Below, in pieces: positions 1-53,568 of a DNA stretch of 64,000 bases. Where the stretch lies: sequence record MZ475892.1; one strand, given 5' to 3'. The position numbers were made by a program, and so were the translations under genes. Below the pieces are notes generated by a model. The model did not search any database and had not been told where the DNA came from. It saw nothing but the letters and a program-made list of their open reading frames with translations. The first letter of the stretch is position 1; each line of letters starts with the position of its first letter.

Positions 1-2397
1 GACGACGTCCTCGATGCTATCGAAAAGAAGACGAAAGTTAGTTCCGCTGATGCTGCCCGACATGCTCCTCGTATCTCGACCGGTGTGCTTGCTCTCGACA
101 TGTATCTGGATGGTGGTATCGTGCCTGGCGGCTGGTACACGTTCAGCGGCGGTGAGCAATCATGTAAGTCAACCATGACCATGAGTATCATGGCCTCTCT
201 TATTCGTCTCAAGTACAGCGGCATTAGCGTTGTGTTTGACTACGAAGGTTCTACCGATGCCGACTACGTTGCTGGTCAGCTCAAAACATTCGGCGTTAAA
301 GTCGATCCGAAAACTATCTTCGGTGTGCGTGATGAAGAAGGCGGCTGGATCATCAAGCCTACCATTCGCTACTACGCGCCTGACAACGGTGAGCGCTTCT
401 TCGATTATATGTCGATGCTGCGTCGTCGCCTGCCTGACAAGATCGTTGAGAAAGACGGTTCAGCTTACTACCTCTTCGAGAACACCAAAGAGAACTCGAA
501 GAAGCTGGCAGGCAAGTACGATAAGAAGTGGTTCAGTCGTAACAACCAGTTCAAAGTTCCTGCGCCAGATGGCCACATGCAGGCTGCTGTTATCGTTGAC
601 TCATATCCGGCAATGCTGCCTGATCAGGTCGATGACGACGACGGTTCAAAAGCAATGGCTCTGCAAGCGCGTATGTTCTCCGATGGCATCAAACGTTTCC
701 GTGGCGGTATGCGCCGTAAGATGATGACTATCGTGGGCGTTAACCAGTTGCGCCAGAAGCCTGCTGTAATGTTCGGCAGCCCTGAATATGAGCCGGGCGG
801 GGACGCTCTCAAGTTCTATTGCTTCGCTGATGACACGCGCATTCGTACCGACCACGGTGTGTTGACTGCGCCTAAGATTAAAGCGTTGCTGGACGAAGGC
901 AAAGAAGTTTGCGTTGAATCGTTCGAAGGCTTCCAGAAGATTAACGGCGCGTGGAAAGTTGAAGACGCTCCTTATCCGATCGAAGTCAATGCTGGTGGCC
1001 ATGTGTATATCGGCAGTGCTGAGCATCGCCAGTTCACCTTCATGCATGACACAACCGCAGAAGGTATGCGTGTACTTCGTCCTGAGTGGAACACGCTTAG
1101 CCAGCTGGCGCAGTACCCTTCTGCGGAAGGTCAGTATGCTGCGATTCGTCTTGCGTCCGTCGAAGAACTCAAGCAGAACACGCCTGATCAATTCGATACA
1201 TCAAGCAAGAACATCGAGCTGGTGCTGTCTAACTGTGGTCCTGAGAAGCGTGATATTAATATCCTCTCTCATGACGGCACAACGTACACAATGCCTGCTG
1301 TGCTGATCGACGCCGTTGGTCCTTACGATCACGTTGAAGACTTCGCGCATTACATTCAGGACTTCCTGAACATCGGTATCTATGCGTATGCAGACAACTC
1401 CGGTATCTGGATTCCTGGTCTGGTTGAAGCTGACCTGCACAACGCTGTTGCACGCGATGCAGACTCTGGTTATCAGGGCGTTGACTTCTACGCTACCTCA
1501 CGTCAGATCAGCTACCAGATGATGGCAGTTATCTCTGATGTGTTCCCAGAGCTGACTCGCTTCGTTCTGGACTTCAACGCTAATCACGCGGAAGAGCAGG
1601 AAGAGCAAGTTTATCTGGCTCCTGGCTTTGACATTGCCGAAGCTATGGACGGCATTCTGCACAAAGAGATCAGCGGCTACGACGACCAGTACGATCTGCT
1701 GATGCAACAACTGGCCTATGTCGAAGACTGGTTCAGTGTTGATGACCGTCTGCTGCCTGTACCGTTTACGCTGCGTGCGCTTGACAAGCAAGTTGAGTTC
1801 TGGGATGTTAACGTCGATGAAACTTCCGTCGTTATCACCAACAACTTCGTTAGTCATAACAGTGACGTTCGCGTTCGTCTGGCTTCTCGTGCTGTGCCTG
1901 AAGGTTGGCCGAAACTCAAAGACGCGCCTGGCGTTGTCGGTGAGAAGTCTGTTTCTGTTGAAGGCGGTACTGACCGCTATCGCTTCATTGCAGCCAAGAC
2001 CATCAAGAACAAGATGGGCGGTATCCCTAACCAGCAGACGTGGTTACGCCTGTGGGAAGCTGACGGTAACGGTGAAGCGCGTGGCTTTGACCCAGTGTTC
2101 GATACATGGCACTATGTCAAAACTCTCGGCCTCGTCAACGGTACGCGCAAGTCATTCAAACTGAAAGCGCCGTGCCCTGTAGCATCCGAAGTTAAGATGG
2201 ATTGGGATGACTTCCGTACGCTGATCAACGGTAACAAAGAACAGATTGTTAGCGTGTGCAAAAAGCTGAAAGTCAAACCTGTATCTCTGCGTCTGTGGGC
2301 GTTCAAGTTCGTGCAGTCCCAGAAAGGCAAAGATATGTTGAAAGCGTCGATCAGTAAGTCCGTCAAGAACGTTAACGACGACGAAGACGACGATTAA
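1..2397 (+). CDS. recA: RecA/UvsX-like recombinase, intein-containing, 5'-truncated by the window edge
   Basis: The frame is open from base 1 (DDVLDAIEKK..RISTGVLALD, the RecA ISTGxLxLD motif). Walker A variant GGEQSCKST, Walker B IVDS, then ALQARMFS, VNQLRQK, MFGSPEYEPGGDALKFY|SDVRVRL and KTIKNK. Confidence 0.93.
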   Translation, partial: DDVLDAIEKKTKVSSADAARHAPRISTGVLALDMYLDGGIVPGGWYTFSGGEQSCKSTMTMSIMASLIRLKYSGISVVFDYEGSTDADYVAGQLKTFGVKVDPKTIFGVRDEEGGWIIKPTIRYYAPDNGERFFDYMSMLRRRLPDKIVEKDGSAYYLFENTKENSKKLAGKYDKKWFSRNNQFKVPAPDGHMQAAVIVDSYPAMLPDQVDDDDGSKAMALQARMFSDGIKRFRGGMRRKMMTIVGVNQLRQKPAVMFGSPEYEPGGDALKFYCFADDTRIRTDHGVLTAPKIKALLDEGKEVCVESFEGFQKINGAWKVEDAPYPIEVNAGGHVYIGSAEHRQFTFMHDTTAEGMRVLRPEWNTLSQLAQYPSAEGQYAAIRLASVEELKQNTPDQFDTSSKNIELVLSNCGPEKRDINILSHDGTTYTMPAVLIDAVGPYDHVEDFAHYIQDFLNIGIYAYADNSGIWIPGLVEADLHNAVARDADSGYQGVDFYATSRQISYQMMAVISDVFPELTRFVLDFNANHAEEQEEQVYLAPGFDIAEAMDGILHKEISGYDDQYDLLMQQLAYVEDWFSVDDRLLPVPFTLRALDKQVEFWDVNVDETSVVITNNFVSHNSDVRVRLASRAVPEGWPKLKDAPGVVGEKSVSVEGGTDRYRFIAAKTIKNKMGGIPNQQTWLRLWEADGNGEARGFDPVFDTWHYVKTLGLVNGTRKSFKLKAPCPVASEVKMDWDDFRTLINGNKEQIVSVCKKLKVKPVSLRLWAFKFVQSQKGKDMLKASISKSVKNVNDDEDDD
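820..1860 (+). mobile_element. Intein (347 aa) inserted in the RecA-like gene at KFY|S
   Basis: Starts with Cys (CFADDTRI), has block B-like SAEH and block F/G FWDVNV...NNFVSHN, followed by Ser+1. Removing it restores GGDALKFYSDVRVRL, matching RecA GGNALKFYASVRL. Only a degenerate LAGLIDADG-like WIPGLVEADL is visible. Confidence 0.93.
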
Positions 2398-2404
2398 TTA
2401 ACTC

Positions 2405-2422
2405 GCGGTCCTTCAGGGCCGC
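2405..2422 (+). terminator. GC-rich hairpin after recA, without a U-tract
   Basis: GCGGTCC-TTCA-GGGCCGC. Confidence 0.5.
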
Positions 2423-2441
2423 CCTATATCTGGAGAAAGAA

Positions 2442-2825
2442 ATGCGTACTCTGATTCATACCGCAGACGTAACCAATCTGTCTGTGCTGGAACTGGAAGA
2501 AGGCTCTGTAGCAAAGCCTGTTACTCCAAGTCTGATTTCTGATCTCAAAGAGCTGTTATCTCGTGAAAACCTGAGCCAGAACATTCGCCACGTTGTGTTC
2601 ATCTCTGCTGACCAGGTCGGCGTATTCACCGAAGCTGAGATGATCAACTACTTCGACCCAATCGAGCAGGTGTCTGAAATCAACGCAGGCAATATCGGTA
2701 CTGTGCTGGCTATGCAGGTTATTCGTGTCGATGACAAGACTAATCTGATCGCAGTGGCTGGTGTCACTGATGTGGAAGAAGGCGTTACTATCAACGAGTT
2801 CAACGCATCGCCTGTAAATCTGTAA
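2442..2825 (+). CDS. Hypothetical protein (127 aa)
   Basis: GGAGA RBS, co-directional ORF, no recognised motif. Confidence 0.75.
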   Translation: MRTLIHTADVTNLSVLELEEGSVAKPVTPSLISDLKELLSRENLSQNIRHVVFISADQVGVFTEAEMINYFDPIEQVSEINAGNIGTVLAMQVIRVDDKTNLIAVAGVTDVEEGVTINEFNASPVNL

Positions 2826-2826
2826 A
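2819..2826 (+). promoter_or_regulatory. TCTGTAAA motif (candidate phage-sigma promoter)
   Basis: AATCTGTAAATA at a gene end; the motif recurs 9 times at gene junctions. Confidence 0.55.
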
Positions 2827-2895
2827 TAAAACAAGTGAGGGCAATCGTGTCCTCACTTAACTCACTCTGATAGGGCATTGACCCGGGAGATAAAC

Positions 2896-3618
2896 ATGAC
2901 AATCAAATTTGTCGAAGTACCGAACGTTAGTATGTTCGAGGGTCTGGTGCATGGCGCCAACCGACACGCACAAAACACCAACATCGGTGGCAAGGCTCGT
3001 TACGCATTCTACGTGGATGTGACAGAAGCTGCGGCCGAAGCTGCACTGTATTCAATGTTGCGCAAGAAGGCACACGCAGATGTTAGAGCTGTGGGCTACT
3101 CTGTTTCTCATACTGTGCGCGGTATGACTCAACCCAAAGAGATTCCTGTTTTCTTGTCCGACAACTTGTCGCACATATCATTGGATTCTTTGAAACAAAA
3201 TTTAGGTGAGTTGCTTCGCGCGCTATGCCGTTCGGCAGCCAGCTCTGATAGCAACATCATTCTGTATTACCAGAAGGACATGGCTTTCATCAAAAGCAAA
3301 ATGTTCGATTGGGTTCTTGAAAGCAAACTGAGCAGACCTTCAAAAGTAGACTGCGAACTGTATGTTCGTTCCTCAAATATCGATCTTAACGTCCTACTTA
3401 ATATCGTTAGAGATCACGATTACATTGGTCACTTTGCATCTAACATACCACAAGAGATTACAATAGGCTCTGATGCGAGTGCCATAGATGCGGTCAAGTT
3501 ATACGACACGGCCGACTTACTGGCTGCTCAAGGTCGCAAAGTGCATCTGTGCAATGACATTTATCGCAAAGCGTTGTCTATCTCCTTTGCCGACGGTATT
3601 CCGCGTAATCAACTGTAA
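2896..3618 (+). CDS. Hypothetical protein
   Basis: GGGAGA RBS before ATG 2896; no recognised motif. Confidence 0.7.
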   Translation: MTIKFVEVPNVSMFEGLVHGANRHAQNTNIGGKARYAFYVDVTEAAAEAALYSMLRKKAHADVRAVGYSVSHTVRGMTQPKEIPVFLSDNLSHISLDSLKQNLGELLRALCRSAASSDSNIILYYQKDMAFIKSKMFDWVLESKLSRPSKVDCELYVRSSNIDLNVLLNIVRDHDYIGHFASNIPQEITIGSDASAIDAVKLYDTADLLAAQGRKVHLCNDIYRKALSISFADGIPRNQL

Positions 3619-3661
3619 CCAAACACATTGCTGTGTGTAGTCTTTGGCCAAACTTAGGCTC

Positions 3662-3688
3662 GGGAGTCCAGGACGGGCTCCCATTTTT
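3662..3688 (+). terminator. Intrinsic terminator
   Basis: GGGAGTCC-AGGAC-GGGCTCCC followed by ATTTTT. Confidence 0.65.
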
Positions 3689-3705
3689 ATTTCGGAGACA
3701 GAACA

Positions 3706-4770
3706 ATGACCGACATTAGAAGCAAAACAGCCTACGAATATCTGCACGACACCTATCTTGAAAACAATTTCTTTGTTGGCGTTCCTCGATCTAAACTCAC
3801 GGCAAAGTTTCAAGAGTACCTGAAGACAACTAACGGTAGGCTGCATCGTCATGGTCTTCCTCTCGCTGACTTTATGACGTGGGCCAACATGCGTCCTGAG
3901 ATCAAAAAGGGCGAACAGCAATTTGATGCCGCTATGAGACTGCACAAACTTTCCTTTGATGCAGCCACCGTGTACACACAATTCGTATGGTCGTTTACCA
4001 AAGGTGTGTTCAAGATCGATCAAGAGATATGGAAGCATCTTGCAGAAGGTGAGCCACCCAAGATACTGCCTTCTGATACGCTCAAGCGTTTGCCTAACTG
4101 GTCACAGTGGTTAGATACATCGCTGAGAATGGTGCGCCACGATAGCGCCAGTGACACGCTGTTTGCTTTGACCACTGAAGGCTTCTGGTCAACTTACCTG
4201 TGCTATGATCATCAAAACAGAACGCACATGTTCCTCGTAGCGCCTACCGTTATGCAAATAGGCAAAGAGAGTTTCATCGCAACCACTCTGGTTATGTTTG
4301 ACATAACAAAAGACCATGAGATGGAAGACAACATGGATTGGCAAATCACTGCCACATCAACTGACGGTCAAACTTCCGTGCGCTTTACGAAAGAGCATGA
4401 AATATACGGCAAGATACTTGACGGTTTGGTTAGTGCTTGGATTGATTCTGCTGTCAATGCGTTGTTGTTCGTCGCTTCATCCGTTGATAACGTTTATAAA
4501 GGAGGTGTAAAGGGAATCGTCCCCCGCAAACAAGGTAAGACGTTCAAAGTTCTACCGATACGTGACGTGCGTGTATGGCATGTAGGTTCAGAGTTGCTTA
4601 ACGAGATACGCCAGTATGAATCTGATGTAGCCTCAGAGAGTTCTCAGAATCGTCGTGCTCACATTCGTCGTGGTCATTATCATAACTACTGGTATGGCCC
4701 ACGTGATGGTGAACGTGTACTAAAGGCCAAATGGCTTCCGCCGTGTGTCGTTCGAGGCACCGCAGAGTAA
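3706..4770 (+). CDS. AcrVA2/FinQ-family protein
   Basis: Collinear motifs WSFTKGVFKIDQEI, KRLPNWSQWLD, EGFWSTY, WHVGSELLNEIRQY, RAHIRRGHYHNYWYG and KWLPP match my recollection of the AcrVA2/FinQ family. Confidence 0.75.
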   Translation: MTDIRSKTAYEYLHDTYLENNFFVGVPRSKLTAKFQEYLKTTNGRLHRHGLPLADFMTWANMRPEIKKGEQQFDAAMRLHKLSFDAATVYTQFVWSFTKGVFKIDQEIWKHLAEGEPPKILPSDTLKRLPNWSQWLDTSLRMVRHDSASDTLFALTTEGFWSTYLCYDHQNRTHMFLVAPTVMQIGKESFIATTLVMFDITKDHEMEDNMDWQITATSTDGQTSVRFTKEHEIYGKILDGLVSAWIDSAVNALLFVASSVDNVYKGGVKGIVPRKQGKTFKVLPIRDVRVWHVGSELLNEIRQYESDVASESSQNRRAHIRRGHYHNYWYGPRDGERVLKAKWLPPCVVRGTAE

Positions 4771-4819
4771 TCACAATCAACCGTATCTTCCATAAAGGCG
4801 TTTAGCCTAGGAGAATCTT

Positions 4820-5578
4820 ATGTCAAGAGTACAAACGTTGTTCATCCCTGAAGTTGAACGTTTTGAAGCGTATGTTAAGTCGTTGCTGCACATGGCACGC
4901 ACGCTAGATAACAGCGGTCGTCAATATAACCGCACGAAACATGTAGTCGTCGTCGGCTCAACAACCCGCACAGTCGAAGCCTACGTCAAAACAACAATCG
5001 GCTCTAACACAGTTCCAGATGGCGTTTTCTGCCTCGGACTGAACCAAGCGCCTGACCTTTATAAGAAATATGACTTCGGCTCGGCTCATGTTGTACTGAT
5101 GTTCGATCTGATGTATACGTCGGAGAGTGCAATCCAATCACTCGCCCACAGACTGTTTGATATTATCCTGACACTCAAGCAGCGCCCAGAAGACAGAGAA
5201 CTGAAAAACCTTCCGATACATATCGTCGGCCAGAACTGGAAGGTGTGGGACGCTATGATGGAGTCCGGCGCAGGCAACGCAGCAAACTACGAATGCTATT
5301 CTAAGGGATTGCAGTTTGCGCCCAATCAAACTTTCGAAACAGCCTCATGCATCACGTTTGATCAGCTACTCACGCAGGACCCGAACACTTACGCCAAGCA
5401 CGACATTTCGATTGGCCGAGAGTTCACCGTGATTGATCATGCTACGCTGATTCAAAAACTCCATAACATCAAATGGGTGTTGCAGTCAGGCCAGACACAA
5501 CACAAACTCATCCTCGACCACGCGTTTCAGCGCATTTTGTTCGAGCAATATCTCTGCTATGAGTTTCAGGGTCTTTAA
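4820..5578 (+). CDS. Hypothetical protein (252 aa)
   Basis: AGGAGA RBS; long ORF. Confidence 0.75.
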   Translation: MSRVQTLFIPEVERFEAYVKSLLHMARTLDNSGRQYNRTKHVVVVGSTTRTVEAYVKTTIGSNTVPDGVFCLGLNQAPDLYKKYDFGSAHVVLMFDLMYTSESAIQSLAHRLFDIILTLKQRPEDRELKNLPIHIVGQNWKVWDAMMESGAGNAANYECYSKGLQFAPNQTFETASCITFDQLLTQDPNTYAKHDISIGREFTVIDHATLIQKLHNIKWVLQSGQTQHKLILDHAFQRILFEQYLCYEFQGL

Positions 5579-5652
5579 GAATAATCTTAGTCCGCTAACT
5601 AATTTAAAAACGTTGGCAAGTAGTGCTGACGTCTAGTTATCGGAGACATAAC

Positions 5653-5916
5653 GTGTACGAACGTAGCCTCGTGCGATTGAAGTACCACGCCAGAGCACAC
5701 CTCTGGTATAATAATACAGAACACGCTTGCAGTGAGCGGAAGGCTACTAATGTGCAATGTGAACAGTTCTTGGAAGCAACCAAGAACTGTCGCTCTGTGC
5801 AGGAGTCGCCTAGTGTTGTTTCTTTCTACTCAGGAGCCGAGCTTGTTGGTCAAGCAATATGGCAGCATGATGCAGACAGTGACAGCACACTTCAATTCCG
5901 GCTTCTACTTGCGTAA
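5653..5916 (+). CDS. Hypothetical protein
   Basis: GGAGA RBS before GTG 5653. Confidence 0.5.
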   Translation: MYERSLVRLKYHARAHLWYNNTEHACSERKATNVQCEQFLEATKNCRSVQESPSVVSFYSGAELVGQAIWQHDADSDSTLQFRLLLA

Positions 5917-5980
5917 CATCCTAAAGGGCTTTCAGATACCTCTGGCGGCCCTTTATCATTTCAATACACGGAGAAAGCCA

Positions 5981-6247
5981 ATGTCTGTTCAGATTCAACT
6001 GTCCGAGAAAAACCTCGACGATATTATGCAGCACTCCACCAGCCGCATCAGCCTGTCTGAGTTGAATGCGCGTCTGGCGCAAGATGAAATCATCATGCAG
6101 GACGTTCCACCAGCACGTCCTGCAGGCGCTGGTGTGCCTATCACTGTCGTGCGTGATATTGTTGACCGCTATCTGGAGCTGATTCGCAATCCAGGTCCGA
6201 TTGACGGTCAATGGCAGCCGCAAGAATACGCTATCGTGCAATACTGA
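5981..6247 (+). CDS. Hypothetical protein
   Basis: GGAGA RBS before ATG 5981, followed by a hairpin. Confidence 0.7.
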   Translation: MSVQIQLSEKNLDDIMQHSTSRISLSELNARLAQDEIIMQDVPPARPAGAGVPITVVRDIVDRYLELIRNPGPIDGQWQPQEYAIVQY

Positions 6248-6251
6248 TCTC

Positions 6252-6273
6252 ATGGGTGCCTTAGGGCGCCCAT
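6252..6273 (+). terminator. Hairpin, probable terminator
   Basis: ATGGGTGCC-TTAG-GGCGCCCAT. Confidence 0.55.
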
Positions 6274-6321
6274 ATTCGTTTATATGCTAATTTCTACCTA
6301 CATTCAACTAGGAGAGACAGC

Positions 6322-6981
6322 ATGAAAATATTCGTTTCGCTGTCGGCCCCACAAAAACAAAAAGAACCGCCGATTGTAACTGAATCTGATCAAAAGAATC
6401 CTCGCGTAAACGATAACAGCAAACTCGGTCAAGTGTTTGATGTGTTCGTGCTCCAGCAAATGTCCTATCTCGATATGAAAGAGATTCGTGGCTCTGCTGG
6501 TCCAAAGTACGCGCAGGTTATTGCCGACTGGCTTAACAGCCAACGCAGTATCGACAATAAGTTCCGTGTGTCTAAGCGCAGTAAGATCTCTATTGCTGTC
6601 AAGAACACTCAACAGCTTGCCGCTCGCTATACGGACATTTACCTGTTGAGTCCTGAGAGCAATAAAGAGCGTTCGTGGTTGCTTAAAGGCGAAGGCCCAC
6701 AAGGCAACAACAAGACGATTGAGATTGGTCGTAATCTCTTATTAGACGTCCTATATGCTTCTGCTCTGACGTTGCTTGGTGCACACCTCGTAACAGAAGA
6801 ATGGCCAGGCAACAGCACGTATGATCAAGTGTTGTTTGAAATGGACAAGCGAAGCAAACGTGGTAAAAGGATTGGTAAGCGCTACCCACGCATTGCCAAA
6901 GAAAATGAAAACACACTAATCACGATGATGCAGGACGGGTTGTCTATTGCAGAAATCACCGATTGGGTTCTGAAACAGTAA
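6322..6981 (+). CDS. Hypothetical protein
   Basis: AGGAGAG RBS; 219 aa. Confidence 0.75.
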   Translation: MKIFVSLSAPQKQKEPPIVTESDQKNPRVNDNSKLGQVFDVFVLQQMSYLDMKEIRGSAGPKYAQVIADWLNSQRSIDNKFRVSKRSKISIAVKNTQQLAARYTDIYLLSPESNKERSWLLKGEGPQGNNKTIEIGRNLLLDVLYASALTLLGAHLVTEEWPGNSTYDQVLFEMDKRSKRGKRIGKRYPRIAKENENTLITMMQDGLSIAEITDWVLKQ

Positions 6982-6990
6982 GAGGAATCT

Positions 6991-7803
6991 ATGTCACTCG
7001 TAAAACTTCAAGGCGTCCCGTCCTTGTCCGCGCCTACCAAGGCCCAGAAAGATGCAGCTATATATATGTTTGGCTCTAAAGGCCATTCTATCGTTGCTGT
7101 GTTGGATAAATTCAGTCGTGCCGAAGAAGTGCGTGCACCGCATCTCGATGGTCTATTGAAGCTGATGAAGGAAGGCGAAGATGATGAGATCATCAAATTC
7201 GTTTCATCTGCTGCTGGTAAGAAAGCTCTGGCTAACGCGAAAGCATTCGCCGTTGCAAAGACACTGACAGCAAGCATCAAAGCGCTTAAACTGATTCGCG
7301 TTCCAATGAAGTGGATCGACGGTCACTCGGATGTTGCTGCTGCACGCAACGAAGAAACCAAAGAGATTCGCGCACGCAAGACTGCTGGCAATCGTCCTGA
7401 GAAGCCTATCAAGCTCGATAACCCGCAAGCGCCTGCACCTGTTACTCCTAAGGCCAAGCCTGTTCACATCCCGTCTGGCAAGTCTGCTGATACGCTGGTG
7501 GATGAGATGGGTGATATTCCTGCGCGTAAGATCTCAGGCAAGAGTATGCAACAGCGTGAGGAATATTTGAATGCTCTGGGCTTCGTTATCCAGCGCAATA
7601 TTCCGCGTGCAAAAGTCAACGTCTCGGCTGACAGCGTTATGGTAACTAAAGGCTCCAAGATTTATACCATTGCACTGACGCCACAAGCGTGGACGCTGCA
7701 AGAAGGTGTGACTAAGAAGCCTAAGCGCATCGGCACAACGTTCGACGTTGTTGCTATACTGTCTGCGATTGATCCTTCGTTCGCTTCGGTCCTGATGAAG
7801 TAA
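6991..7803 (+). CDS. Hypothetical basic (K/A/P-rich) protein
   Basis: GAGGA RBS; 270 aa. Confidence 0.75.
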   Translation: MSLVKLQGVPSLSAPTKAQKDAAIYMFGSKGHSIVAVLDKFSRAEEVRAPHLDGLLKLMKEGEDDEIIKFVSSAAGKKALANAKAFAVAKTLTASIKALKLIRVPMKWIDGHSDVAAARNEETKEIRARKTAGNRPEKPIKLDNPQAPAPVTPKAKPVHIPSGKSADTLVDEMGDIPARKISGKSMQQREEYLNALGFVIQRNIPRAKVNVSADSVMVTKGSKIYTIALTPQAWTLQEGVTKKPKRIGTTFDVVAILSAIDPSFASVLMK

Positions 7804-8058: not shown

Positions 8059-9897
8059 ATGATTGAAGTAAACTGTTTCGCAGATTTACGCACTACCGCT
8101 CCAGCAAAGGCTGGCGACATGGCGTTACTGAAACGTTACTATGACAAAGACAGTTCGTTTCGTGGGGGCGGCTACTTCATCGGCTTTCCGCAGACAAAAG
8201 ATCTGCCCGCAGATGATGGTGGCATCACGGCAGTAGATGCAAACAAAAGTTTCTTCTGGAAGCGTGTTGTGAATGACCCAGAAGAGATTAACCTGTTCCA
8301 CTTTGGTGGTCGCTGCGACGGTAAGACAGATGACAGTGACGCGTTCCTGCGTAACTTCATGTGGACGTGCAAGTCTTCTGATGGCAACGATACTATCGGT
8401 GTGCGCTTCCCAACAGGCACAACGTTGATCAACCCTATCGATCTTACTCACTTGGGTGAGATACCTGTGTTCGCTATCTATGGTGACACACGTTCTGATA
8501 AGGGCTGGCGTCCTCGTGTCAAGCTGATCAGTAACCAAGGCGAAGCTACTGTATTCAAGTTCAATGCACGCCGCACTATTGTTCGTGGCCTGAACTGGAA
8601 CGGTCAGTGCTATCCTGTGAAGGACGGCAAGAAGGTAGACGTGTCCACGATCGTGGGTGCTGTCATGCCTGAGCAGCGTTCGAACAATCAGATCTTCCTT
8701 GAGAACATCTGTACGATGGGTCAGTACATTGGCATACAGTGCTTCCGTGCTGAGAGCAACGGCGGATCTGCATTGAAGTTCCAAGACACCATCGATACTT
8801 CTATCACAGAGATCTACGGCAGCAAGAGCTATGGTGCTGTGATTGAAGCCAAGTGGTCGAACACAGTGCAGGCAGGTTGGAACCACTCTACTGCTGTGCG
8901 CTTAGAGAACGGTAACTTCCAGTACGGCTACGGCCCTGCTGTGTTAGACATGCCGCGTATGACTCAGGCGTTCATGAAGAACGTCTGGATTGAGCACACG
9001 CGATTCCCAGGTAATATGAACGATGGTCAATGGGTGCTTGAAGGTAACTCGATTGAGAGTTCTGACAACCCACTCAATCTGGCTAACACTCGTTGTGTGA
9101 TCAACGGCTACTACTTCCAAGGCGTTGGTACAATGAACTTGGAACGTGCGTCAAGCCCTGACAACTGGCTGAGTGGCTACGAGCGCGGCAACATTCGTAC
9201 TGAGACGTACGGTATCATCATGACCGATTCCTGCTTCCGCGCAGGATACTACACGGGCTATAAGATTACCAACAATACAGATCAGGACAAATGGTTCTAT
9301 CTGGGCAGCTACTCATTCCCGAAAGTGAATCAAGTGTGGCAGATTGAACTGCTGGGTACTGCACCAAACGTTGTGCCTAACACGAAGCTGCAACAGCCTA
9401 CGCAGATGGACGGCATGGGTCGTCGTGTTATCACAATGCAACGCTGCATCTCACCGCAGAAGAAAGTGTATGCCGATATGCACATGGAAGGAACGGACGC
9501 AATCGCCGATGTTGTGTACCAGCGCCTGTGGGAAGACTACGGCAAGGTGTGGGTTAAGCTGAAAGCCAACAGTGGCGATACTATCTTCAACCTGACCACC
9601 ACTGGTCCAACTCGTTTCGAAGCAGGTGTTTGTACATTGTTCAGCGACGGTCCAATTGAATGCGTGGATCCCGTTCTGACCGAGATGACAACCAGTGTCG
9701 AAAAGAATCAGAAGGACTATGCGCGACCTCAGGCTCGTTTCAGTTTGCACAATGGCCTTGCAGGTGTAGGCGCAAACGAGCAGGGTCTCATCACTATTCA
9801 AACCAAAGACGCTACAGCACCGAAAGATACCACTAAGCCTGCTGGCTATGTGAGTGTCAATATCAACGGTGTTGATCGTCTCTTGCCTTACTACTAA
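8059..9897 (+). CDS. amsF: AmsF-like exopolysaccharide-associated (beta-helix) protein
   Basis: Motifs DDGG.T..WKRV, FGGRCDGKTD, FQDTIDT and WSNTVQAGWNHSTAVRLENGNF resemble Erwinia amylovoran protein AmsF and its phage homologues; no Tat leader. Confidence 0.7.
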   Translation: MIEVNCFADLRTTAPAKAGDMALLKRYYDKDSSFRGGGYFIGFPQTKDLPADDGGITAVDANKSFFWKRVVNDPEEINLFHFGGRCDGKTDDSDAFLRNFMWTCKSSDGNDTIGVRFPTGTTLINPIDLTHLGEIPVFAIYGDTRSDKGWRPRVKLISNQGEATVFKFNARRTIVRGLNWNGQCYPVKDGKKVDVSTIVGAVMPEQRSNNQIFLENICTMGQYIGIQCFRAESNGGSALKFQDTIDTSITEIYGSKSYGAVIEAKWSNTVQAGWNHSTAVRLENGNFQYGYGPAVLDMPRMTQAFMKNVWIEHTRFPGNMNDGQWVLEGNSIESSDNPLNLANTRCVINGYYFQGVGTMNLERASSPDNWLSGYERGNIRTETYGIIMTDSCFRAGYYTGYKITNNTDQDKWFYLGSYSFPKVNQVWQIELLGTAPNVVPNTKLQQPTQMDGMGRRVITMQRCISPQKKVYADMHMEGTDAIADVVYQRLWEDYGKVWVKLKANSGDTIFNLTTTGPTRFEAGVCTLFSDGPIECVDPVLTEMTTSVEKNQKDYARPQARFSLHNGLAGVGANEQGLITIQTKDATAPKDTTKPAGYVSVNINGVDRLLPYY

Positions 9898-42263: not shown

Positions 42264-43856
42264 ATGGCACGTTTCGAAACTAACACTAACCTGGTTGGCA
42301 AAACTATCGTCCTGCTGAACGGCACCAAAGCGAAGATTGAAGACGCTATCGTTTCTGGCTACAAAGTGAAAGGCCAGACCAAGCGCATCGCAACCCGTGA
42401 CGTTATCAAAGAGGGTGCGCACTTTAAAGAAATCGAGCGCACGCCGCTGAGCCAGCTGGAAGATACTGGTGAAGGTTATGTGAAGTTGAAAGAAGCCAAA
42501 GCTGCTTCTAAGAAAGCGCCTGCGAAAGACGCTAAAGCTACTGGCAAAAAAGCTGCGGCAAAAGACAAGCCTGCTAAGACCAGCAAAAAAGCTGCCGCTA
42601 AAGATAAGCCAGCGAAAGAGCAAGAGCCGAAAGTTCGCCGTAAGTCTGCGAAAGAGCAGGGCAACGATTATCAGGAACTCGCGCAGGCTATCATCAAAGG
42701 CGGTCGCCGTGCAGCGCCAGTTGAAATTGACAGCGTAGACGAAGCGCTGACCGATGCAATCGCTAAGCGTCTGACCGCTGTTGTCGAATCGTCTGAGATT
42801 GCGAAACTCGCCGCTGATAACAAAACGCCGATCGCTAACGCACTGACCGTAACTTACGGTGCTGAGTTTGCGACTGATGCAAACGTTGTGCAGATTACGC
42901 TGAACCTGCAATACGCTAAGCCGACTGCTGTTGAGTCTGCCGCTCCTACTCTGGAGAATGCCGAAGCAATCGCAATGCGTGCTGCTAAAATGGCCGCGCC
43001 GAAAGTGAGCGCTAAACTCAAGAAGGCAGTGCGTGAAGCATTCGATATTGAAACAGACCTTGAGCTGGGTACTGTGATTATGTCAGGCGATGATCAATTC
43101 GCTTACTACGGCGAAAGCGCGAAGCACGCTGGCAAAGCGCTGCTGTATGTTGTCGAAACTGACAAGTTCAAATCTGTCTTGGCCTCTACTCTGACCGACT
43201 ACGAACTGCCTGCTGATGAAGAAGCTGAGGCAGAAGAAGAGGAGGAAGAAGAAGAAGAGGAGGAAGAAGAACCCGCTGATGACTTCGACGACGAAGAGGA
43301 AGAAGATGCGGACGATGCAGATGATGCCGACGATGCTGATGGCGACGACGACGAATTCCAGTACGTTGCTGTAGGCGATGAACACTTTGCTCTGGTCAAC
43401 AAAAAGATCACAGCCAAGTATCACGATGCACTGGCTGAGCAATTCGGCGTTAGCACCGAAGCGCTGGTCCCAGGCTTAGTGTTGACCAACGGCGAGATCA
43501 CTTTCGCTTATCTGGGCAACGATAGCAAAGGCGGCCTGCTCGTTATCGACCTCGACGACGATGCGGACGAAGACGACAACGTTCTGGTCTACCCGAAAGC
43601 CGACGTTAAATCTCTGACCGACTTCTCTCCTGTGCTGGGTGATGCAGATGAAGAAGACGCAGACGATGCAGAAGAGACCGACGAAGAAGACGAAGATCAG
43701 GACGACGACTTCGAATTTGACGATGCGCCGACTGCCGACCTCGAAGATCTGTCCGACGATGAGCTGCGTGACCGCGCTGTTGAGATGGGCCTGACCACTG
43801 TACGCAAAGCTGACAAAATGAACGCCAAGCAACTGCGTGCGCTGCTGTCTGAATAA
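42264..43856 (+). CDS. Polyampholyte multidomain protein (K/A tract, two D/E tracts, repeated beta modules, C-terminal HeH-like module)
   Basis: 530 aa; GAGGAG RBS in a hairpin; low-complexity tracts are directly visible. Confidence 0.88.
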   Translation: MARFETNTNLVGKTIVLLNGTKAKIEDAIVSGYKVKGQTKRIATRDVIKEGAHFKEIERTPLSQLEDTGEGYVKLKEAKAASKKAPAKDAKATGKKAAAKDKPAKTSKKAAAKDKPAKEQEPKVRRKSAKEQGNDYQELAQAIIKGGRRAAPVEIDSVDEALTDAIAKRLTAVVESSEIAKLAADNKTPIANALTVTYGAEFATDANVVQITLNLQYAKPTAVESAAPTLENAEAIAMRAAKMAAPKVSAKLKKAVREAFDIETDLELGTVIMSGDDQFAYYGESAKHAGKALLYVVETDKFKSVLASTLTDYELPADEEAEAEEEEEEEEEEEEEPADDFDDEEEEDADDADDADDADGDDDEFQYVAVGDEHFALVNKKITAKYHDALAEQFGVSTEALVPGLVLTNGEITFAYLGNDSKGGLLVIDLDDDADEDDNVLVYPKADVKSLTDFSPVLGDADEEDADDAEETDEEDEDQDDDFEFDDAPTADLEDLSDDELRDRAVEMGLTTVRKADKMNAKQLRALLSE

Positions 43857-47359: not shown

Positions 47360-50300
47360 ATGTCCGAGAACAATCAAAGCGGAGCTACTCGCTTCGGCAC
47401 AGAAGTGCAGGCCGGCATCGCAGAAGCGCAACGCCGTGCTAACTCTGCTGAGAGTGGCAAGCTGAACAAATGCACGATCATCGTGCTGACTTCGATTGAC
47501 GCCAACCAGCGTTACTCTTATCTGTCCGCAGACGAACAACTGCGCGAAGAACTGGTGCGTGGTAAAGTAATCAATCGTCTGCCTGACCTGTTAGAGCGTG
47601 CTGGTGGTAATACCGCTGCTGACAATAACAGCGCGTTCCACATCCTGCACCCAAACAACGGCGTGCCTACCTCGATCGATGCTCGTATCAAAGTGGGCGA
47701 AGGCAATGCGGTCATTCTGTCATATACTGTAAACAAAGCAGTGACAGAGATGCACGGTAGCTTATCGCTTGCTCTGTTTGCATCTGGCGCCGAAGACTTA
47801 AATGATCTGGCCGCTGATTTCGGTATTCACGCAATTGCGATTGTTGAAGAATCGAAAGCCGCTGAGTTCATCAAAGGACTTGAAGCTCAGGTGGAAGCGT
47901 TGAATATTGTAAATCTCACTAGCATTGATGATTCTAACGATTCGTTAGACCTGCCAGTGATTGACTTCGCTGCATTAGCGGGCAATCCTACAACAGTGCT
48001 TACGGGTGCTGTGCGTACCTTCATCATGCAATCAATCAGCGGCGAAGTCTTCGCTGCAATCCCTAATAACGGAGAACTGAACGTGAAAAACGATAACGTG
48101 GCTCAGCCTGCTGACCTGGAAGAAGACTTCGACAACAATGATGAGATTGTTGATCAGAACGGCGGTGAAGGCGAAGTTACTGGCGAAGAGCTGCTGGGCT
48201 ACAAAGCAGAAAATCTTTCGCTCGACCAAATGCGTAGTGCGCTTGAAGCGATCAACTACGACCTGTCTGAAATGACGGAAGAAGCAATCCGTGAAGCGTT
48301 CGAAACTGAACAGAACCTTTACCTGGGTGGCGGCGATGACGAATCTTCCGAAGAAGAGGAAGATGAAGACGCCGCTGATGTTGACAGCGACGAAGAAGAA
48401 GAGGAAGAAGACGAGGAGTTCGATGCTCCTGCGTATCTGGCTCAAGCGCTCGCTGCTGAAAACTTTAGCCGTAGCGATCTGAAACTGCTGGTCAAGTCGC
48501 AAGACCTGAAAGTGATGAAGAACGACACTCCTGAAACTCTGGTGCAGAAGCTGCTGGACCTGGTGCAGGACGCATCGTCTGATGAAGTGTTCGAACTGAT
48601 CACTGTGTTCGTTGAACTGCTGGACGAGCACGGCGTTGAGTGTGACGCGCTGCGTGCTACCATCGCTGAGGACGAAAGCGATGAAGACGAAGAAGAGGAC
48701 GGCGAAGACGAAGACGCCGATGAAGATGGCGACGACGAAGAAGAGGAAGATGAAGAGGAGTCTGATGAAGACGAATCTGAAACCGAATCTGATGACGAAA
48801 CCGAAACTCTGTCTGTGGCTGACGTTACCGATCCTCTCGATTACTTCCGCTTCAACGGTGGTGACCTGACTGCCGAGCAGCGTATTGCTGCTGTCGAATC
48901 GATGGGTACAAGCACTGTTGGTCTGAACATTGTTCAGGTCATGAAAGCGTTCAACGAAATCCGCTCACAGTCTAACCTGATCGATATTGCCGCTGATGAA
49001 GCCGACTCTGCGCTGTACGATATGCTGACTGCGCTGCCGTACTCAACGCTGCTGAGCTTCGCTCAAGAGATTGAGCTGGACATTGATGGCGATGAGTCTG
49101 CCGAAGATCTCGTCACTCTGCTGATGGACGAATCTACTGCCGACAGCGATACGCTGAAAGCGTTGGCGTATGTGTTCGAAACCTACGGCGGCCTGGGTGT
49201 TGAAGCAGATGATATCCTGCTGATGGACTGGCATGAAGCGCTGGCGCTGGTTATTCCTGTGTATGCATCGTCAGACGAAGTTGAGTCCGATGCAGAAGAC
49301 GAAGACGAAGACGTTATCGCTGATGAAGATTCGTCTAACGCTAACCTGAAGTTCCTGAAATCTGTTGACGTCAACAACCCTGTCGGCCCGATGCTCGAAG
49401 TTGATATGGACCGCACTCTGGTTATCAACTACACCTTCACTGACGGTAACACCTACCGCGATGTGCAAGATGAGCTGGCTGATATCGGTGGCGTTAACTA
49501 CCGCTTCCCGTTCAATCTGGGCAAAGCTGGTAAAGCAAACAAGAGCAGCGCACCTGGTAGCCTGATTGCTCCTGCTGAACATCTGATCGCAATGTTAGAC
49601 CGCGCCGGTACTACTCGCTTCTTAGCTGACCCGAACACCTTCGATGTTGGTGTGTGGGCAGAATCTCTGGAGCGTATGCTGAACGCAGAAATCGCTAACA
49701 ACCTGTATGCTGGTCGCATTGAAGACGGCGCTGACCCGCAGCAAGCTGGCATCGTAGTCGGTGACTTCATCGATGAAGACGAGCAAGCAGAAGTTGCTGA
49801 CCTAGGTCTGCTGGATGAAGATGAGCTGGAAGCGTACACTGGTGATCATCTGCCGATTGCAAGCCTGTACAATGCGCAAGCCCGCGTACGTCCAGTCAAC
49901 GTCGATAGCTCTTACGTTGCACTGAGCACCGTAGTGCTGAACGTTGCAGTCCCTGGCTTCTGGTGTGACTCTGATGTTGGTCGTCTGGTGCAAGCGTGTG
50001 TTAATCGCGTAATCAGCCTGGCAGAAAGCGTTGAAGGCATCAAAGTGTATGCAGGCTTCACTCTGGAATCTGCTGCGCTGCTGAACAACGGTCGCCTGTA
50101 CGAAGTTGTTGGTGCGCTGCGTGAGATGGACGGTGTGCAGTCTTACTCTGCCGCTGACGCTGCTAACTTCTCAGAAGCGGAAGATATTATCGAAGTGGCG
50201 TCTTCTATCGATGATCGTGACCTGCCGTTCACTGTACTGGCAAGCGGCCTGTCTGGCGCAACGTTTGAAAACGGCGGTGACCTGACCGTGCTGGTTCCGT

Positions 50301-52032: not shown

Positions 52033-52833
52033 ATGGCTAAATCTGCTAAAGTAACCGTAACCGTCGCACAGAAAGTTCTGGCTCAGATGCTGGGTGTTGT
52101 TGTAGCGAACGCAAGCGAGAAAGAACTCGTTGCGATTCTGTCTGACCTGGGCCTGACTGTTGCTGCGAAAGGTAAAGGTGCTAAAGCTGAGAAAGCTGCG
52201 AAGGGCGGCAAGAAAGCTAAAGCCGCTACCGTTGCTCAGATCGTTAAGGCCGTTGAAGAAGAGGAAGCTATCTCCCTCGACGGCGTGAGTGAAGATGACC
52301 TGCGTGCAGCGGTCGTCAAAGCTAAGCTGGCTAAGGCCAACAAAGCTAAAGCGCTGGACGAAGAGGAGTTGACTGAACTCCTGACCGACGCAATGGGTGC
52401 CGAGTCTGATGAAGACGAGGAAGAGGACGAAGAAGAAGAGGACGAAGACGAGGACGAAGACGACTCGGACGACGAAGACGAAGATGAAGACGACGAGGAC
52501 TCAGATGATGAAGATGAGGACGAAGACGACGAAGATTCGGACGACGAAGACGAGGACGAAGATGATGAGGAGGAAGACGAAGACGAGGATGAAGATGAGG
52601 ACGAAGATGAAGATCTCGACCTTGACGGCCTCGACGAAGACGAACTCCGCGCCCTCGTGATCGACAACAAGCTGGCCACTAAGGCCAAAGCTAAAAAGAT
52701 GGACGAAGACGAACTTCGTGAACTGTGTGAATCCCACTTCGGCGGCGACGATGAAGACGAAGACGAAGATGAGGACGAAGACGATGAAGACTTCGACGAT
52801 GAAGACGAAGACGAAGACGACGACGACGAATAA
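52033..52833 (+). CDS. Polyampholyte protein: basic N-terminus, two HeH-like modules, about 70-aa D/E tract and a D/E tail
   Basis: AGGA RBS before ATG 52033; the DSDDEDEDEDDE unit repeats three times. Confidence 0.85.
   Translation: MAKSAKVTVTVAQKVLAQMLGVVVANASEKELVAILSDLGLTVAAKGKGAKAEKAAKGGKKAKAATVAQIVKAVEEEEAISLDGVSEDDLRAAVVKAKLAKANKAKALDEEELTELLTDAMGAESDEDEEEDEEEEDEDEDEDDSDDEDEDEDDEDSDDEDEDEDDEDSDDEDEDEDDEEEDEDEDEDEDEDEDLDLDGLDEDELRALVIDNKLATKAKAKKMDEDELRELCESHFGGDDEDEDEDEDEDDEDFDDEDEDEDDDDE
52400..52615 (+). repeat. Coding low-complexity GAY/GAR repeat (D/E tract)
   Basis: Near-pure Asp/Glu codons with a 36-nt period. Confidence 0.9.
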
Positions 52834-53046: not shown

Positions 53047-53568
53047 ATGACTAAGAAAATCATTTCCGGCCTGAACAAAAACCTGAAAGCTATCGCTAAA
53101 TCAGAAGCTGCCCTGGCCAAAACTGTTGCTGCTACCAACAAAGAGATCGAAAACCTGGGTTCACAGCGTGCTGGTATCGAAGCGCAGATCGCTGAACTGT
53201 CTGGCGTTGCTGCTCCTGACAAAGCTGATAAAAAAGCTAAAGGCGCGAAAGCTGAAAAAGCGGCCAAGCCTGCTAAAGCTGAAAAAGCAGCTAAAGCCGG
53301 TAAGAAAGAAAAAGCTGCTAAAGCTGAAAAGCCAGCCAAAGCTGATAAAAAAGCTAAAGGCGCCAAAGCAGAAAAAGCAGAAAAAGCTACTAAGCCTGCT
53401 AAAGCTGAAAAAGCTGGCAAGAAAGAAAAAGCTGCTACCAAGCCTGCTAAAGCTGATAAAAAAGCTAAAGGCGCCAAGGCGGACAAAGCTGCTAAAGGCG
53501 GTAAAGCTGACAAAGCCGGTAAGAAAAAGAAAGCGCAGTCTGATGACTTCGAATTCGAAATGGAATAA
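53047..53568 (+). CDS. Histone H1/Hc2/AlgP-like K/A-rich protein with an N-terminal coiled coil
   Basis: KADKKAKGAKA(E/D)K three times, KPAKAEKA repeats, acidic end SDDFEFEME; GGAG RBS. Confidence 0.82.
   Translation: MTKKIISGLNKNLKAIAKSEAALAKTVAATNKEIENLGSQRAGIEAQIAELSGVAAPDKADKKAKGAKAEKAAKPAKAEKAAKAGKKEKAAKAEKPAKADKKAKGAKAEKAEKATKPAKAEKAGKKEKAATKPAKADKKAKGAKADKAAKGGKADKAGKKKKAQSDDFEFEME

What the first reader, a model, noticed from the sequence alone, without database searches (positions are those of the whole stretch)
3706..4770. AcrVA2/FinQ-family protein in an enterobacterial jumbo phage, target unknown
Seen: six motifs in the right order and spacing for the family, including R.HIRRGH.H.YW.G and a C-terminal W.P. 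Known: AcrVA2 inhibits Cas12a biogenesis by triggering loss of cas12a mRNA, and FinQ represses F-plasmid transfer genes. Inference: Cas12a is not typical of Erwinia/Dickeya-like hosts, so this homologue probably silences another host target, such as another CRISPR type, a defence system or a pilus/receptor. The gene has its own RBS and follows a terminator.
Basis: partly seen in the sequence, partly recalled or inferred. Interest (0 to 1): 0.8.

Follow-up and report, generated by a model that had tools for sequence, protein, structure and literature searches.

The report
AcrVA2/FinQ-like silencer gene, swapped between phages
This Erwinia jumbo-phage gene is a clear relative of the anti-CRISPR AcrVA2 and the plasmid protein FinQ, which make a chosen target's mRNA disappear; that such relatives occur in huge phages whose hosts lack Cas12a is already published, but here very different versions replace one another at one fixed site in near-identical phages.

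Summary
Window 3706..4770 (+) is an intact 354-aa gene of Erwinia amylovora jumbo phage pEa_SNUABM_34, deposited as 'hypothetical protein'. AcrVA2 (PDB 7CI1/7CI2) is its only significant solved relative, by sequence (E 5e-14) and by fold (Foldseek E 3e-12). It also matches annotated FinQ on about 500 conjugative plasmids (E 1e-8). Close relatives carry Pfam PF26125 'AcrVA2-like'. The three AcrVA2 residues needed for mRNA loss are present (H319, R321, H324). The upstream terminator-like hairpin and GGAG ribosome-binding site are real.

The family assignment is therefore supported. It is not new: published work already reports AcrVA2 orthologues on megaphages, usually without Cas12a, and a related Erwinia phage gene is annotated 'putative FinQ'.

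One thing is new. The gene sits at a fixed place after the sigma–SSB–UvsX genes. Phages 94–100% identical in those genes carry versions only 29–35% identical. The DNA break coincides with the gene. Within one version, dN/dS is 0.04–0.11.

The likely mechanism is docking on the ribosome, recognition of a nascent target protein and loss of its mRNA. This is inferred, and the target is unknown. The host has type I-E CRISPR-Cas, and the paper read mentions no Cas12a.

The parts
3622..3643 (+). Conserved intergenic element (the window's letters AACACATTGCTGTGTGTAGTCT, with a small ACAC/GTGT hairpin). Candidate regulatory site or upstream recombination anchor of the swapped gene.
   Evidence: It occurs once in the 64-kb window. 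It is nearly invariant in 8 aligned phages although the flanking proteins are only 25-48% identical. In an IMG/VR scan it occurs once per contig in 9 contigs, directly upstream of an AcrVA2-like ORF in 7 of them.
3662..3692 (+). Terminator-like G+C-rich hairpin (stem-loop 3662..3682) followed by a T-rich tail.
   Evidence: The consensus scan finds 8 pairs, 6 of them G-C. The fold of 3619-3705 gives -31 kcal/mol, z = -3.3. The stem is kept in 8 phages, with two pairs changed on both sides.
3694..3697 (+). Shine-Dalgarno-like GGAG, 8 nt upstream of the ATG.
   Evidence: Read directly from the sequence.
3706..4770 (+). Intact CDS of 354 aa: AcrVA2/FinQ-family (PF26125 'AcrVA2-like', PHROG 6160) protein.
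   Evidence: It is the only copy in the window. dN/dS against close relatives is 0.04-0.11.
3706..3960 (+). Residues 1-85: helical N-terminal region specific to the jumbo-phage clade and the most variable part. Inferred to contribute to target recognition.
   Evidence: The AF2 model shows helices 9-19, 28-41, 53-59 and 72-98. Residues 1-80 (in 20-residue blocks) share 0.02-0.14 identity with distant family members, at occupancy 0.3-0.9. Identity between versions in Erwinia/Dickeya phages is 17-43%.
3961..4560 (+). Residues 86-285: middle alpha/beta body carrying W95, D105, P122-W132 and G159-F160. It aligns with AcrVA2 residues about 72-154.
   Evidence: W95 and D105 align with AcrVA2 W79 and D89, whose mutation weakens AcrVA2.
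4561..4767 (+). Residues 286-354: conserved C-terminal beta module. Inferred to be the ribosome-docking and effector part.
   Evidence: It is the best conserved part. Identity between versions is 50-77% over residues 311-354. Residues 321-340 share 0.53 identity with distant relatives. It aligns with AcrVA2 250-316. A review reports that AcrVA2's C-terminal part associates with ribosomes (PMC13728456).
4660..4698 (+). Core motif H319-I-R321-R-G-H324-Y-H326-N-Y-W329-Y-G331.
   Evidence: H319, R321 and H324 align with AcrVA2 H286, R288 and H291, which are required for mRNA loss. These residues are shared by 99-100% of 141 distant representatives and by all 9 phage versions compared.
2896..3618 (+). 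Upstream neighbour (240 aa, no family match), part of the fast-diverging segment. Given for context only.
   Evidence: It is 25-29% identical to its counterparts, while UvsX is 57-78% identical.
4820..5578 (+). Downstream neighbour (252 aa, no family match). Given for context only.
   Evidence: It is 34-39% identical to its counterparts and is not a paralogue of the upstream neighbour.

Best explanation
The gene encodes a functional member of the AcrVA2/FinQ family. By homology, its conserved C-terminal module (H319/R321/H324 and neighbours) docks on translating ribosomes. Its variable N-terminal and middle parts recognise the emerging polypeptide of one particular target protein. A cellular RNase is then brought in and the target's mRNA is lost, so the target is never made. 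In this phage the target is not Cas12a. It is most likely a host defence factor, or a protein of a rival mobile element, in Erwinia or its relatives. The gene occupies a fixed slot after the sigma factor, SSB and UvsX genes, and deeply diverged versions replace one another there by recombination, which fits versions with different target specificities. Shown: family membership, fold, conserved functional residues, purifying selection, synteny and replacement of versions. Inferred: the mode of action, the roles of the domains and the class of target.
For: AcrVA2 is the only significant PDB relative, by sequence (E 5.1e-14 for the single protein, 2e-13 for the profile). It is also the only one by fold: the AF2 model has pLDDT 81 and pTM 0.81, and Foldseek gives E 2.9e-12, probability 1.00, TM 0.46-0.57. 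Annotated finQ genes on conjugative plasmids are hit at E 1e-8 over residues 95-349. PF26125 'AcrVA2-like' is recorded on all close relatives. The residues needed for AcrVA2 activity are conserved. The mechanism of the family prototype comes from bioRxiv 10.1101/2022.11.29.518452 and a 2026 summary (PMC13728456). The conservation gradient fits a variable recognition part and a constant effector part. dN/dS of 0.04-0.11 shows a working protein. SNU33 and AD1 are 98% (UvsX) and 100% (sigma) identical but only 29% identical in this protein. Their DNA similarity stops 14 nt before the gene's start and resumes about 40 nt before its stop. The host is described with type I-E CRISPR-Cas and a remnant I-F array, and that paper does not mention Cas12 (PMC9004355).
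Against: There is no functional evidence of any kind for this protein. Identity to AcrVA2 and FinQ is only 19-23%. The global TM-score is moderate and the RMSD is about 10 A, so the domain arrangement may differ. The local Pfam and NCBIfam scans gave no hit. No Aca-like regulator lies next to the gene. The hairpin ends 23 nt before the ATG and no sigma-70-like promoter was found nearby, so how and when the gene is transcribed is unknown. A review describes FinQ as causing Rho-independent termination in the tra operon (PMC8744291), so one mechanism for the whole family is not established. Two metagenomic relatives have other genes between the counterparts of the upstream neighbour and of the gene beyond, and no AcrVA2-like ORF in the stretch held, so the gene is dispensable for this phage type.
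Confidence: 0.6

Rival explanations
1. It is a true anti-Cas12a anti-CRISPR, like AcrVA2 itself.
For: AcrVA2 is the closest solved relative and the functional C-terminal residues are conserved.
Against: E. amylovora is described with type I-E and a remnant I-F array, and that paper does not mention Cas12. The parts inferred to recognise the target are the least conserved. The family is reported to occur mostly without Cas12a. Four deeply different versions in phages of one host species do not fit a single conserved target.
Confidence: 0.03
2. It works like FinQ in competition between mobile elements: it silences genes of a co-resident plasmid, prophage or co-infecting phage, rather than a host defence.
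For: It matches annotated FinQ directly. The published proposal for the family is 'conflict between mobile genetic elements'. Exchange of versions among co-circulating phages fits this.
Against: There is no evidence for any such target. A lytic jumbo phage has less obvious need to suppress plasmid transfer genes.
Confidence: 0.15
3. It is a host-takeover factor that silences a housekeeping or stress-response protein of the host, not an immune protein.
For: The gene lies next to replication and recombination genes (sigma, SSB, UvsX) rather than in a recognisable anti-defence island. A homologue is present at the same place in most relatives examined.
Against: A conserved housekeeping target would not favour 25-35% identical versions in phages that are 94-100% identical elsewhere. 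Two relatives have no AcrVA2-like ORF in the stretch held.
Confidence: 0.15
4. Only the ribosome-binding C-terminal module is shared. The protein acts on translation in some other way, general or phage-directed, without silencing a specific target.
For: Conservation is concentrated in the last 70 or so residues. Several phage hits match only that part.
Against: The middle-domain residues W95, D105 and P122-W132 are also conserved family-wide, and two of them matter for AcrVA2 activity. The fold match to AcrVA2 spans the full length.
Confidence: 0.07

Closest known systems
AcrVA2 (Moraxella bovoculi prophage; PDB 7CI1, 7CI2)
   Same: It is the only significant solved relative by sequence and by fold. 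Size is similar (354 aa against a 323-residue chain). The conserved blocks are collinear. H286/R288/H291 and W79/D89 of AcrVA2 have equivalents H319/R321/H324 and W95/D105.
   Different: Identity is about 19%. The first 85 or so residues are specific to the jumbo-phage clade. TM is only 0.46-0.57. The carrier is a lytic jumbo phage of a host for which no Cas12a is described. No AcrVA1-like partner and no Aca gene were seen next to it. Activity is untested.
FinQ (fertility inhibition protein of IncI1-type conjugative plasmids)
   Same: tblastn hits annotated finQ genes in several hundred Escherichia, Salmonella and Shigella plasmids, with E 1e-8 to 9e-6 and 23% identity over residues 95-349 or 121-349. 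Both belong to the AcrVA2-like family, and both are reported to lower target mRNA.
   Different: FinQ is plasmid-borne and acts on F transfer genes. The N-terminal part does not align. A review describes FinQ's mechanism as Rho-independent termination.
AcrVA2/FinQ-like genes already noted in other phages (Erwinia phage Special G 'putative protein FinQ'; Shewanella phage vB_SbaS_Y11 ORF43; huge-phage clusters)
   Same: The family and the situation are the same: a phage-borne homologue in a host without Cas12a.
   Different: The window's protein belongs to a separate subfamily of the Snuvirus, Alexandravirus, Sasquatchvirus, Yoloswagvirus and Rivsvirus jumbo phages. Only 9 representatives score E below 1e-30, against 2,444 family clusters at E below 1e-3. 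Replacement of versions at a fixed locus was not mentioned in the papers read here.

Membership tests
AcrVA2/FinQ family (Pfam PF26125 'AcrVA2-like') | Significant sequence similarity to AcrVA2 | tested here: met
   phmmer E 5.1e-14 and profile E 2e-13. AcrVA2 is the only PDB hit below E 0.9.
AcrVA2/FinQ family (Pfam PF26125 'AcrVA2-like') | Match to the Pfam family model | tested here: inconclusive
   The local Pfam-A scan gives no hit even at E 10. The precomputed tables list PF26125 on all 10 close relatives, including one 98% identical and one 82% identical. The local copy probably lacks this model.
AcrVA2/FinQ family (Pfam PF26125 'AcrVA2-like') | Same fold as the AcrVA2 crystal structure | tested here: met
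   Foldseek E 2.9e-12, probability 1.00, full-length alignment, TM 0.46-0.57. The next PDB hit has E 0.046.
AcrVA2/FinQ family (Pfam PF26125 'AcrVA2-like') | Conserved C-terminal H-x-R...H residues required for AcrVA2 activity (H286, R288, H291) | tested here: met
   H319, R321 and H324 align with them (the chain index is offset by one). They are conserved in 99-100% of 141 distant representatives.
AcrVA2/FinQ family (Pfam PF26125 'AcrVA2-like') | Similarity to FinQ | tested here: met
   tblastn hits annotated 'finQ: protein FinQ' at E 1e-8, 23% identity, 72% of the query.
AcrVA2/FinQ family (Pfam PF26125 'AcrVA2-like') | Translation-dependent loss of a specific target mRNA; association with ribosomes | not testable with these tools
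   This needs expression data. It is known only for AcrVA2 itself.
Type V-A anti-CRISPR (functional class) | Inhibits Cas12a; the host carries Cas12a | not testable with these tools
   Activity could not be tested. E. amylovora is described with type I-E and a remnant I-F array, and that paper does not mention Cas12 (PMC9004355). The gene should not be filed as an anti-Cas12a protein.
Canonical acr-aca operon | Adjacent helix-turn-helix Aca regulator | tested here: not met
   The neighbours at 2442-2825, 2896-3618, 4820-5578, 5981-6247 and 6322-6981 have no Pfam or PHROG match.

The most novel reading that the evidence does not exclude
The slot after sigma, SSB and UvsX in these Erwinia/Dickeya jumbo phages is a cassette site where deeply diverged AcrVA2-like silencers are exchanged between near-identical phages. 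The conserved flanks (the intergenic element and hairpin upstream, the last 40 or so coding bases downstream) would serve as recombination anchors. Each version would be aimed at a different host or rival-element protein. That would make this a natural panel of near-isogenic, cultured phages that differ in a nascent-chain-directed gene silencer, from which non-Cas12a targets of the family could be read off.
Probability: 0.3. Interest if true: 0.7.

Novelty: new member of a known kind. Interest (0 to 1): 0.4.

Why it matters
AcrVA2 is reported as the first bacterial example of a protein that recognises a nascent polypeptide and has its mRNA destroyed. The open question is what the thousands of homologues outside Cas12a hosts are aimed at. 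This gene does not answer that. It does show that a set of already isolated, nearly identical E. amylovora and Dickeya jumbo phages differ almost only by which version of the gene they carry. That comparison is a favourable descriptive setting for finding new targets. For annotation, pEaSNUABM34_00248 and its counterparts can be renamed from 'hypothetical protein' to 'AcrVA2/FinQ-family protein'.

Tried and rejected
- **Family libraries.** Local Pfam-A and NCBIfam scans of the protein and five relatives gave no family hit. PHROGs gave only phrog_6160, of unknown function.
- **Word-indexed homologue search.** It reached only the close jumbo-phage clade, even with a profile. The exhaustive representative search was needed to see the wider family.
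- **Second copy.** A family HMM against all six-frame ORFs of the window found none.
- **Own promoter.** No sigma-70-like site lies near the gene.
- **The conserved intergenic element as a general phage promoter.** Rejected, because it occurs once in 64 kb and once per genome.
- **The two flanking genes as paralogues that could drive recombination.** Rejected.
- **The genes that occupy this place in two metagenomic relatives.** They have no Pfam or PHROG match.
- **RNA genes.** No tRNA and no Rfam family were found in the window.
- **Composition.** The variable segment has slightly lower G+C, 45-48% against 50-53% in UvsX, but there is no sharp boundary at the gene.
- **Antisense ORF.** The 173-aa ORF at 3517..4038 (-) was treated as spurious, because it is not annotated in the record.
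- **Target prediction.** Not attempted, because no tool here predicts complexes.

Full report
**1. What is there.**
The window is part of Erwinia phage pEa_SNUABM_34 (MZ475892.1). This is a 264,306-bp jumbo phage of Erwinia amylovora, and window coordinate = record coordinate - 200,306.

The ORF 3706..4770 (+) starts with ATG, has 354 codons and no internal stop. It is the deposited CDS pEaSNUABM34_00248, 'hypothetical protein'.

A G+C-rich hairpin at 3662..3682, followed by a T-run, precedes the gene. GGAG at 3694..3697 lies 8 nt before the ATG.

**2. Is it an AcrVA2/FinQ relative?** Yes.
- **Sequence.** phmmer against all PDB chains returns one hit, AcrVA2 (7ci1_A), at E 5.1e-14. It matches in two collinear stretches: query 87-174 to chain 72-154, and query 286-349 to chain 250-316. 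A profile of nine relatives gives E 2e-13.
- **Fold.** An AlphaFold2 model (pLDDT 81, pTM 0.81) finds only AcrVA2 chains in the PDB at a significant level. Foldseek gives E 2.9e-12 to 1.4e-10, probability 1.00, a full-length alignment and TM 0.46-0.57. The next hit has E 0.046.
- **FinQ.** tblastn against plasmids hits several hundred Escherichia, Salmonella and Shigella conjugative plasmids at genes annotated 'finQ: protein FinQ'. E is 1e-8 and identity 23% over residues 95-349.
- **Family tables.** Precomputed tables list Pfam PF26125 on every close relative, and one table names it 'AcrVA2-like'.
- **Negative results.** The local Pfam copy gives no hit, probably because it lacks that model. 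NCBIfam gives nothing. PHROGs places the protein in phrog_6160, of unknown function.

**3. Functional residues.**
Marino et al. (bioRxiv 10.1101/2022.11.29.518452) found that H286A, R288A and H291A abolish AcrVA2's down-regulation of cas12a mRNA, and that W79A and D89A weaken it. In the HMMER alignment these residues correspond to H319, R321, H324, W95 and D105 of the window protein (the PDB chain index is one higher than the residue number).

I aligned the protein with 141 distant cluster representatives. The shares carrying the window's residue are:

| Window residue | Share of 141 representatives |
|---|---|
| H319 | 99% |
| R321 | 100% |
| H324 | 99% |
| H326 | 96% |
| W329 | 91% |
| G331 | 99% |
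| W343 | 96% |
| W95 | 95% |
| P130 | 100% |
| P122 | 97% |
| G159 | 94% |
| G294 | 96% |

The first 80 residues are poorly shared (0.02-0.14 identity, occupancy 0.3-0.9). Residues 321-340 are the best shared (0.53).

**4. Size and spread of the family.**
An exhaustive profile search of 1.84 billion cluster representatives gives 2,444 clusters at E below 1e-3 and 736 at E below 1e-10. Only 9 score below 1e-30, so the window protein belongs to a small, distinct jumbo-phage subfamily.

Among deposited phages, 92 records hold a match. Sixty are Erwinia phages; the rest include Klebsiella, Serratia, Dickeya, Salmonella, Moraxella, Pasteurella and Leptospira phages. The counterpart in Erwinia phage Special G is already annotated 'putative protein FinQ'.

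The literature already states that AcrVA2 orthologues occur on plasmids and megaphages, 'typically in the absence of Cas12a'. It also reports that huge phages encode proteins clustering with AcrVA2, and that a Shewanella phage carries one in a type I-E host. The finding is therefore a new member of a known kind.

**5. Context.**
The gene order is sigma factor, SSB, UvsX/RecA-like, a 127-aa gene, a 240-aa gene, the AcrVA2-like gene, then a 252-aa gene. This order is shared by the relatives examined in Sasquatchvirus, Alexandravirus, Yoloswagvirus and Rivsvirus, apart from single missing neighbours in a few. pEa_SNUABM_7, whose version is 98.6% identical to the window's, is classed as Snuvirus. 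None of the immediate neighbours has a Pfam or PHROG match, and there is no Aca-like regulator. An EPS-depolymerase-like tail gene follows at 8059..9897.

**6. Replacement of versions (the new observation).**
Against eight relatives, sigma is 76-90% identical and UvsX 57-78%. The AcrVA2-like protein is only 25-48% identical, and its order of relatedness does not follow the core genes.

Pairwise identities are as follows:

| Phage pair | UvsX | Sigma | AcrVA2-like protein |
|---|---|---|---|
| SNU33 vs AD1 | 98% | 100% | 29% |
| SNU33 vs SNU20 | 94% | 95% | 30% |

At least four lineages exist: {SNU34, Y3/pEp52, SNU33}, {Yoloswag, SNU5}, {Alexandra, AD1, SNU18} and {SNU20}. Identity is 45-73% within lineages and 24-35% between them.

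At DNA level, SNU33 and AD1 are 94% identical upstream. They show no detectable similarity from 14 nt before the start codon to about 40 nt before the stop of the gene. They are 92% identical again from there on.

For the window phage, the islands of DNA similarity inside the variable segment are the upstream intergenic element with its hairpin (3616-3692) and the 3' end of the gene (4561-4770). A third island lies further downstream at 5568-5954.

All nine versions keep the functional residues. Within the window's lineage, dN/dS is 0.04, 0.07 and 0.11 against relatives that are 98.6%, 98% and 82% identical. The picture is deeply diverged but individually constrained versions exchanged at a fixed slot, not continuous rapid change.

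**7. The upstream element.**
The 22 nt at 3622..3643, a second small hairpin and the terminator-like hairpin are almost invariant in eight phages, although both flanking proteins have diverged to 25-48% identity.

The element is unique in the window. In IMG/VR a near-identical pattern occurs once per contig in nine contigs, and in seven of them it lies directly upstream of an AcrVA2-like ORF.

In two metagenomic contigs it precedes the counterpart of the 240-aa neighbour instead. There, two unrelated ORFs of 255 and 228 aa follow that gene, and no AcrVA2-like ORF is present in the stretch held. The gene is therefore not indispensable for this phage type.

The role of the element is open. It may be a regulatory site, or a recombination anchor that defines the upstream edge of the exchanged piece.

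**8. How it most likely works.**
AcrVA2 binds the N-terminal nascent polypeptide of Cas12a and causes translation-dependent loss of its mRNA. A 2026 summary of the published work adds three points. The C-terminal part associates with ribosomes and polysomes. AcrVA2 does not cleave the RNA itself. It recruits a cellular enzyme (PMC13728456).

The window protein keeps the C-terminal module and its key residues, and it varies most in residues 1-85 and 171-245. I therefore infer the same division of labour: a constant ribosome-docking and effector end, and a variable recognition body.

E. amylovora is described with a type I-E system and a remnant I-F array, and that paper does not mention Cas12 (PMC9004355). 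Cas12a is therefore not the expected target.

Which protein is targeted cannot be determined with these tools. I rank the candidates as a host defence factor first, then a protein of a rival mobile element (FinQ-like), then a host housekeeping protein. The coexistence of very different versions in near-identical phages argues against a single conserved housekeeping target.

**9. Caveats.**
- No expression or activity data exist for this protein.
- The TM-score is moderate and the domain orientation may differ from AcrVA2.
- The hairpin ends 23 nt before the ATG and no sigma-70-type promoter was found, so the transcription signals are unknown.
- A review describes FinQ as acting by Rho-independent termination, so one mechanism for the whole family is not established.
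- One notebook entry gave the start of the intergenic element one base too early. A later entry corrects it.

**10. Verdict.**
The novelty is a new member of a known kind, with a new descriptive twist: replacement of versions at a fixed locus. Interest is 0.4.

Noticed in passing
window 3622-3692; L002-L009 and L012 upstream of the homologous genes; L013-L021: A 22-nt element, a small hairpin and a terminator-like hairpin are nearly invariant across phages whose flanking genes have diverged to 25-48% protein identity. The element occurs once per genome. In two metagenomic contigs (L015, L017) it sits one gene further upstream, and no AcrVA2-like ORF is present in the stretch held.
   Followed up: partly
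window 5623-5916 (+): A conserved small ORF, 74% identical over 84 residues to gp248 of pEa_SNUABM_33 (E 2e-38). It lies in a 400-bp gap of the deposited annotation of MZ475892.1. The DNA at 5568-5954 is a conserved island inside the variable segment.
   Followed up: partly
L006 9435-10487 (Erwinia phage Alexandra gp249): The annotated start of Alexandra's AcrVA2-like gene lies inside the conserved intergenic element, upstream of the terminator-like hairpin, so it is probably set too far upstream.
   Followed up: no
window 1-2397 (+), continuing upstream of the window (L001 5097-7598): The UvsX/RecA-like gene encodes 833 aa here and about 830-850 aa in the cultured relatives, but only 506 aa in the metagenomic relative L015. 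The PHROG UvsX profile (506 positions) spans residues 1-829, and the RecA Pfam match is split in two, which suggests a large insertion of about 330 aa. No intein family scored.
   Followed up: no
window 43218-43690, 48671-48795, 52411-52829, 53248-53522: These are coding tandem repeats. Several are long acidic (GAA/GAC, Asp/Glu-rich) tracts. One is a 63-bp repeat that would encode Lys/Ala-rich AKAEKA-type units. SSB-like proteins of relatives also end in long acidic or basic low-complexity tails.
   Followed up: no
window 2400-7000: The segment after UvsX has lower G+C (45-48% against 50-53%) and consists of genes without any family match that are only 25-49% identical to their counterparts, or are absent in some relatives. 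It looks like a hypervariable accessory segment.
   Followed up: partly
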